From contig CDMY01000520.1 of assembly GCA_001179505.1 (NCBI GenBank), positions 62,001-126,000 on the forward strand: a DNA stretch of 64,000 nucleotides. The letters are read 5' to 3'. Below the pieces are notes generated by a model that ran no database searches, was not told the DNA's origin, and saw only the letters and a list, made by a program, of their open reading frames with translations. Within the stretch, counting starts at the first letter, position 1; every line of letters starts with the position of its first letter. The translations under genes and the position numbers were made by a program. This DNA is from Vitrella brassicaformis CCMP3155 (taxonomy: Eukaryota; Protista; Chromerida). This document shows, piece after piece, positions 54,987 through 59,119 of this stretch.

Positions 54987-57487
54987 CTAATGCCCTCTCG
55001 GTTCTCGCGAGTCTCGCCTCCTACTGTCGGGAATGTCTATGGCCACCTCGCCTTCCCTTCCTCCATCTTCCCCCGCACCCACACCAACACCCTCACCCAC
55101 ACCCACACCCATCCCGGAGCCGCCCCTGTCTCCCGCCTCCTCCCCCCTGTCATCGCTCGAATCGCCCCCGTCTGTCTGGACGGGGATCGCAGCGATCGTC
55201 ACGGTCCGCTTTCTCCCTAACACCGGCTTCTCCCGTTGTCTCTTCTCTCTTTCTCGCCTGGACGAGCCCCCGCCTTCACTCCTCTCGCCCCTCTCCAGGT
55301 CTTGGAAGGGATCACGGTCTCGATCTCGATCACGGGTTCGGCTCCCGGACAGCCTCTTGAGCAGGCTATGGGATCGCTCGCTGTCGGCTTTTCTGTCTCT
55401 TGTGCGTGAGGGGGCTCGGTGTGTGTCGGGGAGGGAGGGGGAGGGTGGGGCTGGGGCTGCATCGGACCGGTTGGCCCGGGGAGGGAACAAACGTCTCTTC
55501 TGCTGTGCGGGCTTCTGGGGGGCGGCGGGAGATGACTGAGTAGTGGTCGAGATATCCTGCATGCACAGTAGAGGAGGACGATGTATGTGTAGAGCGTGTG
55601 GATGGTTTTCCTCCCTCCACTGGTGTGTTTGTGTGTGCCGTGTTTAGCTACCCTGTAGTGTGCGATGAATGCTTCCTCCTCAGGCGAGATGCTGACAGCA
55701 AAGAGAAAGCCCCGCCACCAACCCAGTATGTCGATCAGCTCCCACAACACACTGCACGGCCAGATTCGCCAGAGACACACAGAAGTGACCATTCATGTGA
55801 TTGAGTTGAGAACGGGAGGGTCAATCGCCACGGACCGGCTTGAAAATTTGCTGACGTCCTTCTCTCTCTGCTCGATGTCGGGCATCCATGCGAATGTGCG
55901 AAACAAATACTCAGATGCACCCTCCCGCCACGTGGCATCCCTAACGACCACAACCACCACATGACAGACGGCCGGACAGGGAGACCAGACTGTATTTGTT
56001 GGATGGATGGATGGCATGGCATCTCTCTCCGTGTGTCTAGGAAGGCCACTCACCTTAGGTAAGCGATTTGGTTGACGATTGCGAGATAGCTCAGAAAACG
56101 CGTGGCGCTCCACATCGCTGGGGGGCAGACAGGATCGCAGCAAGCGTGGCGCGACTTGGTTAGCGTGGGAGTGCGTGCGTCCTTTCCTCACCCACCGGGT
56201 GAGCTCGTAAGCGCGAATTGGATAGAGAACAGCTTGAGCATTGGGATAACAAAGCTCCAGGGGACCACCAGGCAGAACAACAAACGCAGAAAGAATATCT
56301 CGCAAACCCTGAACACACACACACACACGCAGCCACAGAGGGAGAGACACCTGCCCACAATCCGGGCAATGTGTCTCCTTCCTGTCTCCCTCCGCCCACA
56401 CACATGGTGCTTTTGGTGTCCTGATCGCCTCCCTTCTCCCTCCTCCCCCCGGCACGCGACAGCCTCATCGCTACATTGGGGTTCCTCCTGTGTGCGGATG
56501 CGATGAGCGTGCCATGCTGAGAAAATGACGCCGACAGCTGCTGCTGCTGCTGCTGCGCCGCTGTGCGGTCGTTGAGGGACCGCCAATACTTCTTGATGAA
56601 GCGAATCGACGGAACAAAGCTGACATGCCGGACAGAGGGAGGGAGGGAGAAAGGCCTGTGTGCTTGCATGTGTTTGCATCGGCAGTGGGGGTGTGTGACT
56701 TACACGAGCGTGGAGAATCCAGAGAGCTGGATGAGGCTCTTCTTGAGAGACAGGACGTCTCCCGTTCGGACATGGAGGAAAAGCGACAAAAGCAGCGTGC
56801 CCATCACGGCCGCTTCCAGCCTGACAACCAATGACGGCACAATCCAATCCATGCCGTTCGTCAGAAACACCGGGCTCAGCTGCAGATGGCTGATTGTCTT
56901 GCTGTCTGACTCACTGACCAGACTTGGATCATGACGCTCTCATAGTACCCCTGGAACAGCTGCGCGCTCTTCTCCCTCAGCTTGCCCGTGTCGCTGAGCG
57001 CACTGAACGTGTTGAAGATGATGAACGTTCCGTTGACAACTATCATCAAAGCCACAGCCACCCCCTCCACATAATGCGCACCGCCGTGCTGCTCCACCAG
57101 CGCCCGAATGTTGGCCTTTTGCAGGCCGCGAGGGTTGAATCGCAGCCAGAACTTCCTGTGCAGCGTCGACGGTCGGCCGCCGGCACTCTGAGGTGTCTGG
57201 GCAGGCCGCTTTCTGCGTGAGCTTCTCGCGTCTCTGCCGAGAGTGGACGATAAAGGGCCGCCCGGCAGCCCGTCGCCGACTGAGATGCTCTGGGTGAGTG
57301 CGCGGGGGTCGGCAATCTGCCGCCTCGACGGCGGGGCGGAGGTGGACGACTGGGGCGGGAAGCCGCCAGGGTGGACAGTGACTGTCGCCGCCTCGTCATG
57401 GGATGAATGGGCGGAAGTGGGCGGGTCCACATTCACGGTTATCGACTGGGGTTCCAATGCTGCTGCTGCTGGTCTGTTGGATGCCAT
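54987..57487 (-). CDS. Multi-exon hypothetical membrane protein
   Basis: ATG 57487. Disordered N-terminus, hydrophobic segments (GVAVALMIVVNGTFIIFNTF; AAVMGTLLLSLFLHV) and a basic/acidic C-terminal tail ending at 54987. Confidence 0.55.
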
Positions 57488-57676
57488 CGAAACAGGAGGG
57501 CTGCAGCAGCAGCGGTTTCACGTGAATAAACTAGGGCCGACTTGCGAGCTTTTCGCTAACAGACTTTGCCCTTCCCTGGCGCTAACGGGGAGATCATCCT
57601 TCCTCCATTCCGGTTTGTGCATCTCCCTGAGCTCTTCCCCTCAAAGATCCTCTCCCTCGCTTCCTCACTGGTGATC

Positions 57677-58666
57677 ATGCGCGCCGCCATTGTGCTCGTC
57701 GCCCTTGCCCTCGTGTGCATCTCTCGTGTGAACACGGTTCCACTCAGCACCACCAGCAGAGAAGGCCGACAGTGGGAAGAGACAGGGTGTGAGTATCCCA
57801 GCGGCTCGGGAAACAACGAGCCACTCATCTGGGTTGAGAACATTGCCGCGCCTGGCGGCGTCGCGGACAACTGGGGTAAGCAGAAGAGTACAGGCGTCTC
57901 CGGGCACGTGGGCATCATTTGGTATGTGTGGGCCTGCAGGATACATTGGATGCGGGAACAATGGCAACATCTACAGAATCTTCTCCAATCACGTCCACCG
58001 CGGCACAGAGCACAGCCTGTCTGACGAGAAGTATAAGAGGAGTCTGAAGGTGGCCACGACACACATGAGACACTCCTTATCTATCTATCTATCTACCTAT
58101 CTGTCCTCCCTCCCTGCAGGACCTTTCTGGTGAGTTCAAGAAGGATGCATACGCCAAGGTGAGTGAACATAATGGCTGCTGCACATCGTGATGCAGCCAT
58201 CCACGTGCATATATGGTGCTCTGCCTCAGTTTGCGGAGCTGCATCTCAAGGAATTCCAGTGGGACCCAGAGAAGACAAGGATGAATAGCGAAGAGGAGAA
58301 AGAACAAAAGCACATCGGTAAGTTGACATATGGGTACAACAAGAGCAGAGCAGACCTGTCCCTCCTGTGTGTGCCGTGCGCGCAGGTGTCTCTGCCCAAG
58401 ATCTGAAGCAAGCGTTTCCAGGTAAGAGATCAAACGGACACGTACGTTTCTGGCCGACATGTGATGGCTTTCCGTCTGTGACTATTTCAGATGCCGTCAA
58501 CGTGTATATGGAGGCCGCGGGCGAGGGATCCACAGCCACCGACGTCCACTACGTCGACACGGATTACATGAGCTATCTCCAGATGGCGGTCATCCAGCAG
58601 CTGCAGGCGGAGGTCGCGGCCCTCAAAGCCCAAGTGACCAAGATGGGGGAACGCTCCCTCCGCTAA
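57677..58666 (+). CDS. Secreted 215-aa protein with a phage-tail-fibre-like tip and a peptidase S74 (intramolecular chaperone auto-processing) domain
   Basis: Exons 57677-57875, 57940-58049, 58120-58158, 58230-58317, 58386-58421 and 58491-58666 total 648 nt, all GT-AG and in phase. Signal peptide, then PGGVADNWGYIG...IYRIFSN...LSDEKYK, ELHLKEFQW, HIGVSAQDLKQAFPDAV, YVDTDYMSYLQMAVIQQLQAEVAALKAQV. Confidence 0.85.
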
Positions 58667-59083
58667 TCGACATATGCATGCTTATCTGGTTGAGTGCTGC
58701 GCTGTTGGGCGTGATCGGTTGGCTGTATTGTGCATGATTCATGAATGTGTGCACCCGAATCGACTTCCTGGCTAGCTACATCGTTGTAGCGTTATTTGTC
58801 TTGTTGTTCACGAGAGGAAGGTCACACCCATGGGTGTGAACCCGTGGCTGCGTTCCCTTGCTGACCCATCCACTAGCCTTAGTACTCCTCAGTTATTTGT
58901 GAGTGACCGTCCACATTATCATCATCGTATGACTCACTCGGTCGTGTATTTGTCACTCCTAGTGCATGATGTGTCTCTGTGCTCTCGGCGACCAAACCAG
59001 GGAGTCGTACGATAGCTCAAGAGAGCCAAACCTGCCTAAACAGACAGACAGATGAGTGCGTGAGCGTTGTTCTGTGTGTGTAT

Positions 59084-59119
<36 letters not shown>

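What the first reader, a model, noticed from the sequence alone, without database searches (positions are those of the whole stretch)
57677..58666. Secreted, intron-containing 'mini tail-spike': phage tail-fibre tip plus self-cleaving S74 chaperone in a eukaryote
Seen: a clean 6-exon ORF of 215 aa with a signal peptide, a ~70-aa passenger ending P.GVADNWGYIG...IYRIFSN...L|SDEKYK (Ser94, codon 58020-58022), then LKEFQW, HIGVSAQDLKQAFPDAV, YVD.DY and a terminal coiled coil (VIQQLQAEVAALKAQV). Established: SDxRxK, GxxAQE/D, VDY and a C-terminal coiled coil define the peptidase S74/ICA domain of phage endosialidases and tail fibres and of MYRF. It trimerises its passenger and cleaves itself off through a Ser-Lys dyad. 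The preceding P..DN...G.....IY pattern recalls phage fibre tips. Known eukaryotic examples such as MYRF are large membrane-bound transcription factors. Inference: a domesticated phage module that folds and releases a very small (~73-aa), stable extracellular trimer, possibly an adhesin, wall or extrusome fibre, or toxin. This is the best candidate for an undescribed system in the window.
Basis: partly seen in the sequence, partly recalled or inferred. Interest (0 to 1): 0.82.

Follow-up and report, generated by a model that had tools for sequence, protein, structure and literature searches.

The report
Small secreted self-cleaving chaperone protein, Vitrella
The alga Vitrella brassicaformis expresses a spliced six-exon gene for a 215-residue, probably secreted protein made almost entirely of the trimer-forming, self-cutting "chaperone" domain known from phage tail fibres and animal MYRF; it is real but is one of about 25 unstudied paralogues, not a unique system.

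Summary
The six-exon model (57677-58666, +) has GT..AG introns of 64-71 nt. Spliced transcript contigs from four runs in three studies join the exons exactly as modelled. The product equals database protein P0001 (Vitrella brassicaformis, auto-named "Peptidase S74 domain-containing protein").

- **Domain:** residues 94-160 match Pfam PF13884 (46.6 bits, cut-off 22).
- **Fold:** residues 77-215 superpose on the MYRF chaperone crystal structure (Z 12.1, 2.0 Å).
- **Catalytic residues:** Ser94, Lys99 and GxxAQ are kept.
- **Trimer:** a three-copy model scores 0.88 against 0.02 for controls.

Residues ~44-93 of the "passenger" are not a receptor tip. They are the conserved pre-cleavage segment that also precedes this domain in bacterial proteins and MYRF. 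Only ~25 residues are lineage-specific.

No sequenced phage is a close relative. The nearest non-Vitrella kin are small secreted proteins encoded in bacterial chromosomes. The gene belongs to a Vitrella clade with at least ~25 loci. This scan has already reported that family on other DNA of this genome.

Self-cleavage, secretion and function are untested. I read it as a new variant of a known kind, of moderate interest.

The parts
57543..59102 (+). Transcribed region (approximate ends)
   Evidence: The transcript contigs start at 57543, 57570, 57579 and 57609. They run about 102 nt past 59000 (table 8).
57677..57736 (+). Signal-peptide-like leader, residues 1-20 (inferred cleavage after T20)
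   Evidence: Hydrophobic core at residues 3-15. The aligned paralogues end in AXA-type sites. The leader DNA is 81% identical to the C204 paralogue.
57677..57875 (+). Exon 1: leader, variable head with Cys38, and the first part of the pre-cleavage segment (NNEP...DNW)
57940..58049 (+). Exon 2: the GYIGCG...IYRIF segment (Cys71), the presumed scissile bond L93|S94, Ser94 (58020-58022) and Lys99 (58035-58037)
58120..58158 (+). Exon 3 (ICA domain, helix 107-118)
58230..58317 (+). Exon 4 (ICA domain, LKEFQW...HIG)
58386..58421 (+). Exon 5 (the GVSAQD motif, i.e. GxxAQ; G146, A149, Q150)
58491..58666 (+). Exon 6: YVDTDY strand, C-terminal coiled-coil helix (residues 181-214) and stop codon
58020..58663 (+). 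Genomic span of the ICA/S74 domain (residues 94-215, interrupted by introns 2-5)
   Evidence: PF13884 at residues 94-160. PHROG tail-fibre C-termini at residues 94-212. pLDDT 88-98. MYRF ICA match at Z 12.1.

Best explanation
This is an expressed nuclear gene of Vitrella brassicaformis. It encodes a minimal secreted member of the intramolecular-chaperone (ICA, peptidase S74) family. Shown: the gene model and its splicing, the S74 profile match, the ICA fold, retention of the Ser94/Lys99 dyad and the GxxAQ motif, a predicted homotrimer, and membership of a Vitrella-specific paralogue clade. Inferred mechanism: the N-terminal leader takes the protein into the secretory pathway. Three chains then assemble through residues 94-215, using intertwined strands and a three-helix coiled coil. 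This templates the short beta segment at residues ~67-93. Ser94, activated by Lys99, then cuts the L93|S94 bond. The products would be an ICA trimer of ~14 kDa per chain and an N-terminal trimer of ~8 kDa per chain. The N-terminal piece is a ~25-residue fast-diverging head on the conserved pre-cleavage segment, possibly locked by the family-specific Cys38 and Cys71. Its target is unknown. An extracellular or cell-surface binding or structural role is the most likely guess.
For: - **Splicing and expression:**
- **Identity with P0001:**
- **Pfam:** PF13884 at 46.6 bits against a cut-off of 22, profile positions 1-57 of 58.
- **Phage families:** PHROG tail-fibre families at E ~1e-12 over residues 84/94-212.
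- **Conserved residues:** S94, K99, G146, A149 and Q150 are at least 90% conserved, and D95 is invariant, across 29-34 relatives.
- **Solved relatives:** the family profile hits ICA-bearing structures 6f45 (1e-21), MYRF 7dc3 (8e-21), 8jov, 8hqz and 3gud, with SD.R.K aligned.
- **Structure model:** AF2 gives pLDDT 88-98 for residues 94-215.
- **Fold search:** Foldseek finds only ICA structures at E<=1e-3. VIA gives Z 12.1, rmsd 2.0 Å over 133 residues to the MYRF ICA, with the next unrelated fold at Z 3.7.
- **Trimer:** ipSAE 0.88 in three runs against a best control of 0.02. Runs agree in at least 70% of contacts, partner pLDDT is at least 68, and confident contacts begin at residue 77. The mark was reached by 21 of 30 solved homo-pairs and 0 of 23 single chains. 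Because ICA trimers are solved, this pass may be from memory.
- **Dyad function elsewhere:** the equivalent dyad is required for MYRF cleavage, and K583A blocks it (PMC3742443).
- **Divergence pattern against the nearest paralogue P0034:** leader 65%, head 30%, pre-segment 18%, rung 33%, ICA 52-58% identity.
- **Cysteines:** C71 is invariant and C38 is present in 6 of 7 Vitrella paralogues, while bacteria have T or S at the C71 position.
Against: - No experiment shows secretion, trimerisation or cleavage.
- No signal-peptide predictor was run.
- The passenger (residues 1-93) is modelled at only pLDDT 51-69, and no confident trimer contacts lie before residue 77. It is therefore open whether a released 73-residue piece stays folded and trimeric.
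- Arg at +3 and Asn at +7 of the SDxRxKxN consensus are Lys and Ser here.
- Some paralogues have lost the dyad (P0004, the C592 locus). Cleavage is therefore not essential to the family.
- The trimer score may reflect memory of solved ICA trimers.
Confidence: 0.6

Rival explanations
1. The ICA domain is the working part and the protein is not a release device. It would act as a permanent or self-standing trimerisation scaffold that displays, or simply carries, a short head. Cleavage would be absent or incidental.
For: Paralogues without the Ser or Lys persist (P0004 has Q and T; C592 has no SD..K). The ICA part is the best conserved (52-58% against 18-33%). The passenger has low model confidence. 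Earlier scan notes describe dyad-less secreted members (a lead only).
Against: This gene keeps S94, D95, K99, G146, A149 and Q150. So do most close paralogues (P0034, P0033, P0002, P0006, P0025).
Confidence: 0.2
2. It is a shortened, functionally drifting copy of a longer fibre gene in the family. It would be expressed but without a role of its own.
For: Longer relatives exist in the genome (P0025 431 aa, P0039 309 aa, open frames of 346-393 aa). The passenger is mostly the scaffold segment, with only ~25 unique residues.
Against: The frame is intact across five correctly spliced introns. The transcript occurs in three studies. The catalytic motifs are conserved. At least five similar small paralogues have the same leader-head-rung-ICA layout (C204 x2, C905, C835, C318). 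Equally small bacterial counterparts exist.
Confidence: 0.1
3. It is a fibre gene of an integrated virus (polinton-like or another eukaryotic virus), not a host gene.
For: PF13884 fibres are reported as ubiquitous in polinton-like viruses of protists (PMC12220804). This genome has a polinton-like element on contig C484 with its own S74 ORF.
Against: The gene has five spliceosomal introns of host type. No protein-primed polymerase hit lies on contig C520. Flanking ORFs have no viral Pfam hits. The C484 viral copy falls outside the cellular clade (96/93 support). There is no IMG/VR relative.
Confidence: 0.03

Closest known systems
MYRF intramolecular chaperone auto-processing (ICA) domain (PDB 7dc3; PMC3742443)
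   Same: This is the best structural match: Z 12.1, rmsd 2.0 Å over 133 residues, model 77-215 against chain 569-705. The profile match is 8e-21 and includes the stretch before the cleavage site. Both have the Ser/Lys dyad, the GxxAQ motif, a following coiled coil and a eukaryotic host.
   Different: P0001 shows no Ndt80 DNA-binding domain and no transmembrane segment. It is 215 aa with an N-terminal secretory leader, whereas MYRF is a large ER-membrane transcription factor. The sequence is too distant for a single-sequence hit.
C-terminal ICA of phage endosialidases and tail fibres (endoNF 3gw6, T5 pb1 4uw8/8hqz, phi29 gp12 3gud, S16 gp37 6f45)
   Same: Pfam PF13884 and the PHROG tail-fibre families match. 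The fold matches at Z 6.1-7.4. The profile hit to 6f45 is 1e-21. Both sit at the C-terminus and both are presumed to cleave N-terminal to the Ser.
   Different: The passenger is ~73 aa instead of hundreds. The gene is a spliced nuclear gene with no virion genes nearby. There is no tblastn hit in 50,697 phage records.
Small signal-peptide-bearing S74 proteins of bacteria (P0009, P0011, P0020, P0026, P0029, P0032; 159-206 aa) and longer kin (P0012, P0017, P0024, P0044 Ferruginibacter)
   Same: The layout is the same: hydrophobic leader, short head, the NNEP...NWGYIG..IY.IY segment, then S74. Identity is 21-29%. The pre-cleavage segment is shared at 25.5 bits. The genes lie in chromosomal, non-phage contexts. 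The Atlas also lists clusters of 139-160-aa S74 proteins.
   Different: They are prokaryotic and intronless, and lack the Cys38/Cys71 pair. The nine sampled form a clade of their own, separate from the Vitrella proteins (97/98). They are also unstudied.
S74-capped fibre proteins of polinton-like viruses, and the polinton-like element on C484
   Same: Both are PF13884 domains carried by eukaryote-associated DNA. This is a possible entry route into algal genomes (PMC12220804).
   Different: They are large modular or intronless viral ORFs lying beside a polymerase and integrase. The C484 copy is only remotely similar (hhalign E 7.5e-6) and falls outside the clade.
Vitrella paralogues (P0034, P0033, P0002, P0004, P0006, P0025, P0039)
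   Same: Identity is 24-45%. They share the leader, the RQW.E..C motif, the G.IGCG motif and the ICA domain. They form one clade with 96/84 support. Introns 2-5 sit at the same positions in the C204 genes.
   Different: This member is among the shortest and keeps the dyad. Others are longer, intronless (C592) or have lost the Ser or Lys.

Membership tests
Peptidase S74 / ICA domain (PF13884) | Profile match above Pfam's gathering score | tested here: met
   46.6 bits against a cut-off of 22, E 4e-12, residues 94-160 matching profile positions 1-57 of 58. The exons searched singly gave nothing, because the domain is split over exons 2-5.
Peptidase S74 / ICA domain (PF13884) | Catalytic Ser at the domain start and Lys five residues later (SDxxxK) | tested here: met
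   S94 and K99 align with the nearly invariant Ser and Lys of 29-34 relatives and with solved ICA proteins. The +3 position is Lys, not Arg.
Peptidase S74 / ICA domain (PF13884) | GxxAQ(E/D) motif and a C-terminal coiled-coil helix | tested here: met
   G146, A149 and Q150 are at least 90% conserved. A helix spans 181-214 at pLDDT 92-98.
Peptidase S74 / ICA domain (PF13884) | ICA fold | tested here: met
   Foldseek finds only ICA structures at E<=1e-3. VIA gives Z 12.1 to MYRF, 7.4 to T5, 7.0 to endoNF and 6.1 to phi29, with the next fold at 3.7.
Peptidase S74 / ICA domain (PF13884) | Homotrimer | tested here: inconclusive
   The model supports it: ipSAE 0.88 against a best control of 0.02. 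This is a prediction and may draw on solved ICA trimers.
Peptidase S74 / ICA domain (PF13884) | Autocatalytic cleavage N-terminal to the Ser | not testable with these tools
   Needs protein chemistry (wild type against S94A and K99A).
Peptidase S74 / ICA domain (PF13884) | A trimeric beta-helical passenger immediately upstream | tested here: inconclusive
   Residues 67-93 align to the pre-cleavage stretch of MYRF and of a phage fibre. Trimer contacts begin at residue 77. Passenger pLDDT is only 51-69.
MYRF / MrfA membrane-bound transcription factors | Ndt80-type DNA-binding domain before, and a transmembrane segment after, the ICA domain | tested here: not met
   No such Pfam hit. The protein ends 55 residues after the Pfam domain. 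The only hydrophobic stretch is the N-terminal leader.
Phage tail fibre / tailspike gene | Encoded among virion genes of a phage or prophage, with close phage homologues | tested here: not met
   It is a spliced nuclear gene. There is no phage tblastn hit and no IMG/VR relative.
Polinton-like virus fibre gene | Lies in an integrated element with a polymerase, integrase and capsid genes | tested here: not met
   No PF03175 hit on C520. The neighbouring ORFs have no Pfam hit. The gene has five introns. The capsid search was uninformative because its controls were silent.

The most novel reading that the evidence does not exclude
Vitrella has turned the ICA domain into a general secretory 'fold, trimerise, cut off' cassette. 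A conserved leader and a conserved chaperone bracket short, fast-diverging heads. The ~25 loci would then produce a repertoire of tiny covalently locked extracellular trimers, used to bind bacteria, coral host surfaces or the alga's own wall. This would be a eukaryotic counterpart of phage receptor-binding-protein diversification. The gene studied here would be the minimal, still self-cleaving form.
Probability: 0.2. Interest if true: 0.75.

Novelty: new variant of a known kind. Interest (0 to 1): 0.5.

Why it matters
Outside viruses, the only eukaryotic ICA domain studied so far is in MYRF, an ER-membrane transcription factor. Here the same self-cutting trimeriser sits in a very small secreted protein, and an alga related to apicomplexans has expanded it into a sizeable family. 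If cleavage and secretion are confirmed, this would be a second, independent eukaryotic use of the module. It would also offer a very compact natural system (about 8 kDa plus 14 kDa) for studying chaperone-templated trimer folding. The shared layout with small bacterial proteins, and the S74 gene in a resident polinton-like element, make the route of acquisition testable. The protein is already auto-annotated and the family has been met repeatedly in this scan, so this locus adds a clean minimal member and not a new system.

Tried and rejected
- **Exon-by-exon Pfam scan:** no S74 hit, because the 58-position domain is split over four exons. This is uninformative, not negative.
- **Single-sequence phmmer against the PDB:** nothing. 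The family profile was needed.
- **Word searches with P0001 and with the Vitrella profile:** only Vitrella proteins and a few bacterial ones.
- **tblastn against phage records and IMG/VR:** no relatives.
- **The search for related loci in bacterial genomes, tried with two alignments:** The taxonomy of the bacterial relatives therefore rests on one named protein (Ferruginibacter), on T9SS-domain neighbours and on chromosomal contexts.
- **NCLDV capsid search:** no hit, but the controls were silent too, so this is no evidence.
- **Bacterial contamination:** rejected on the five spliced GT..AG introns and host-like paralogues.
- **Plastid targeting through a bipartite leader:** considered. The residues after the leader are acidic (E29, E34, E35, E39), which is unlike a transit peptide. 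This was not tested with a predictor.
- **PHROG scan of the passenger alone:** no hit.
- **Papers:** none describes Vitrella S74 proteins.

Full report
**What is there**

The window is contig C520:62001-126000 of a 72.7-Mb, 1064-contig genome. Database names identify it as Vitrella brassicaformis CCMP3155.

On the + strand, an ATG at 57677 opens a six-exon reading frame that ends at 58666. The exons are 57677-57875, 57940-58049, 58120-58158, 58230-58317, 58386-58421 and 58491-58666. All five introns are GT..AG and 64-71 nt long. The total is 648 nt.

Transcript-type contigs were laid on 57400-59000 for runs X1, X2, X7 and X8, which come from three studies. Each run has one contig of about 1.2 kb that covers exactly these six blocks, adjacent in the record, with no differing letters. 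Four joints are reported as GT..AG. The intron-2 joint lies at a skipped repeat but is plain in the table of pieces.

The transcript starts between 57543 and 57609 and ends near 59102.

**How the spliced model was handled**

The exons were searched singly by reference and gave nothing, as expected for a domain cut into four pieces.

I then used a stop-free window reference (57566-58021) with scoring restricted to exon 1. This retrieved the database record P0001. P0001 is 215 aa and identical to the exon translations. All later work used P0001.

**Family membership**

- **Pfam:** P0001 matches PF13884 at residues 94-160, at 46.6 bits (cut-off 22) and E 4e-12, covering profile positions 1-57 of 58.
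- **PHROG:** the tail-fibre families phrog_1980, 5668 and 6921 match residues 84/94-212 at their own C-termini, at E ~1e-12.
- **Conserved residues:** across 29-34 relatives D95 is invariant, and S94, K99, G146, A149 and Q150 are at least 90% conserved.
- **Solved relatives:** a family profile hits solved ICA-bearing proteins, with the SD.R.K stretch aligned. These are the phage S16 fibre 6f45 (1e-21), MYRF 7dc3 (8e-21), 8jov, T5 8hqz and phi29 3gud.
- **Structure model:** an AlphaFold2 model with a 34-row alignment has pLDDT 88-98 for residues 94-215 and 51-69 for residues 1-93.
- **Fold search:** Foldseek finds only ICA structures at E<=1e-3.
- **Second look at the fold:** VIA gives the MYRF ICA at Z 12.1, rmsd 2.0 Å, 133 residues, model 77-215. 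T5 follows at 7.4, endoNF at 7.0 and phi29 at 6.1. The first unrelated fold is at 3.7.
- **Trimer:** three copies of residues 20-215 give ipSAE 0.88 in each of three runs, against 0.02 for the best control. At least 70% of contacts are shared and the partner pLDDT is at least 68. Confident contacts run from residue 77 through the coiled coil. The mark was reached by 21 of 30 solved homo-pairs and 0 of 23 single chains. Because ICA trimers are solved, the pass shows likeness more than it proves binding.

In MYRF the equivalent Ser/Lys pair and the leucine zipper are needed for cleavage, and the ~40 residues before the cut are proposed to hold the N-terminal trimer together (PMC3742443).

**What the passenger really is**

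An exhaustive phmmer search of 1.84 billion representatives gave only 32 hits at E<=1e-3. Eight clusters hold Vitrella proteins. The rest are unnamed metagenome proteins.

Several of these are as small as P0001 (159-206 aa), begin with a hydrophobic leader, and share a segment directly upstream of the Ser. The segment reads NNEP.I.P...NWGYIG(T/C)(S/G)....IY.IY..IY.

A profile built from the bacterial pre-cleavage segments alone scores P0001 residues 20-93 at 25.5 bits. The best of 2000 shuffles scores 7.9. The sequences had been picked as hits to P0001, so some selection bias applies.

The same stretch aligns to the pre-cleavage residues of MYRF and of the S16 fibre. So residues ~44-93 are conserved scaffold, not a receptor tip. 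That leaves ~25 lineage-specific residues after the leader.

Two cysteines are specific to the Vitrella clade. C38 is present in 6 of 7 paralogues and C71 in all 7. Bacteria have T or S at the C71 position. A disulfide lock is an inference.

Against the nearest paralogue P0034, identity is 65% in the leader, 30% in the head, 18% in the pre-segment, 33% in the rung and 52-58% in the ICA domain.

**Origin and family**

- **Family size:** a profile of seven Vitrella members finds matches on 23 contigs, at least ~25 loci.
- **Similar small genes:** full-length look-alikes of this gene lie on C204 (a tandem pair), C905, C835 and C318.
- **Introns:** introns 2-5 sit at the same positions in the C204 genes. 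The C592 member is intronless across the domain and has lost the dyad.
- **Tree:** in a maximum-likelihood tree the eight Vitrella proteins form one side of a branch (96/84), and P0001 pairs with P0034.
- **Phage and viral databases:** no sequenced phage and no IMG/VR contig holds a close relative.
- **Bacterial relatives:** three that could be placed lie in ordinary bacterial chromosomes. One is named Ferruginibacter, and others carry or neighbour T9SS sorting domains.
- **A viral route:** polinton-like viruses of protists commonly carry PF13884 fibres (PMC12220804). This genome has a polinton-like element on C484 with protein-primed polymerase, an rve integrase and packed intronless ORFs. 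One of these is a 377-aa S74 ORF.
- **That viral copy is not the source clade:** it is only remotely similar and falls outside the cellular clade.

The donor is therefore unresolved. 'Phage-derived' is true of the domain's deep history, not shown for this gene.

**Mechanism and rivals**

My best reading, with confidence 0.6 for the whole chain, has four steps. The protein enters the secretory route. It forms an ICA-driven trimer. Ser94/Lys99 cut at L93|S94. Two small trimers are released.

The domain identity is close to certain. Secretion is likely. Cleavage is plausible but untested.

There are three rivals:

- **Uncleaved scaffold (0.2).** This is favoured by dyad-less paralogues.
- **Drifting truncated copy (0.1).** This is disfavoured by intact splicing, expression, and the existence of equally small paralogues and bacterial counterparts.
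- **Integrated viral gene (0.03).** This is disfavoured by the introns and the genomic context.

**Known or new**

UniRef already names P0001 a 'Peptidase S74 domain-containing protein'. No paper in the library treats Vitrella S74 proteins.

This scan has reported the same family at several other loci of this genome. One such report concerns a dyad-less pair 33 kb beyond this window, and I saw a family hit at that place (C520:159922-160113).

I could not test that.

This is a new variant of a known kind, of moderate interest. Its particular value is as the minimal, dyad-retaining member of the family.

Noticed in passing
G000:C484:~49000-66000 (L025 3051-9927, L026 770-9777, all on the - strand): A polinton/Maverick-like integrated element. 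It has protein-primed DNA polymerase B split over two ORFs, an rve integrase, and a run of tightly packed intronless same-strand ORFs. One of these is a 377-aa ORF ending in an S74 domain (48.8 bits).
   Followed up: partly
window 57677-57750; G000:C204:115718-115790: The DNA coding for the signal peptide is 81% identical to the C204 paralogue, and the leader is 65% identical at protein level. The passenger is only 18-33% identical. The upstream promoter DNA does not align. This points to either strong constraint on the leader or its exchange between copies.
   Followed up: partly
window 57400-57609: A separate transcript contig ends at 57522, and a minus-strand ORF starts at 57487. The S74 transcript starts 20-90 bp further on. 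This looks like a head-to-head gene pair with a very short shared promoter region. The neighbour has no Pfam hit.
   Followed up: partly
G000:C592:35619-36329 (+): This family member is intronless across the whole domain and lacks the SD..K dyad, whereas the small genes carry 4-5 introns. That would fit an intronless ancestor followed by intron gain.
   Followed up: no
P0009, P0020, P0026, P0032 (metagenome proteins); L023 8001-8570: Small (189-206 aa) bacterial S74 proteins whose hydrophobic leaders end just before a Gln. From general knowledge, that pattern is typical of secreted Bacteroidota proteins. They appear to be an unstudied class of 'mini' S74 proteins encoded in chromosomes, not prophages.
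   Followed up: partly
P0005, P0010 (JGI/IMG metagenome fragments): Environmental fragments cluster at 90% identity or more with the Vitrella paralogues P0033 and P0034. Vitrella-like organisms carrying this family are therefore present in public metagenomes.
   Followed up: no
window 59073-59110: A (TG)n microsatellite lies right at the inferred 3' end of the transcript.
   Followed up: no
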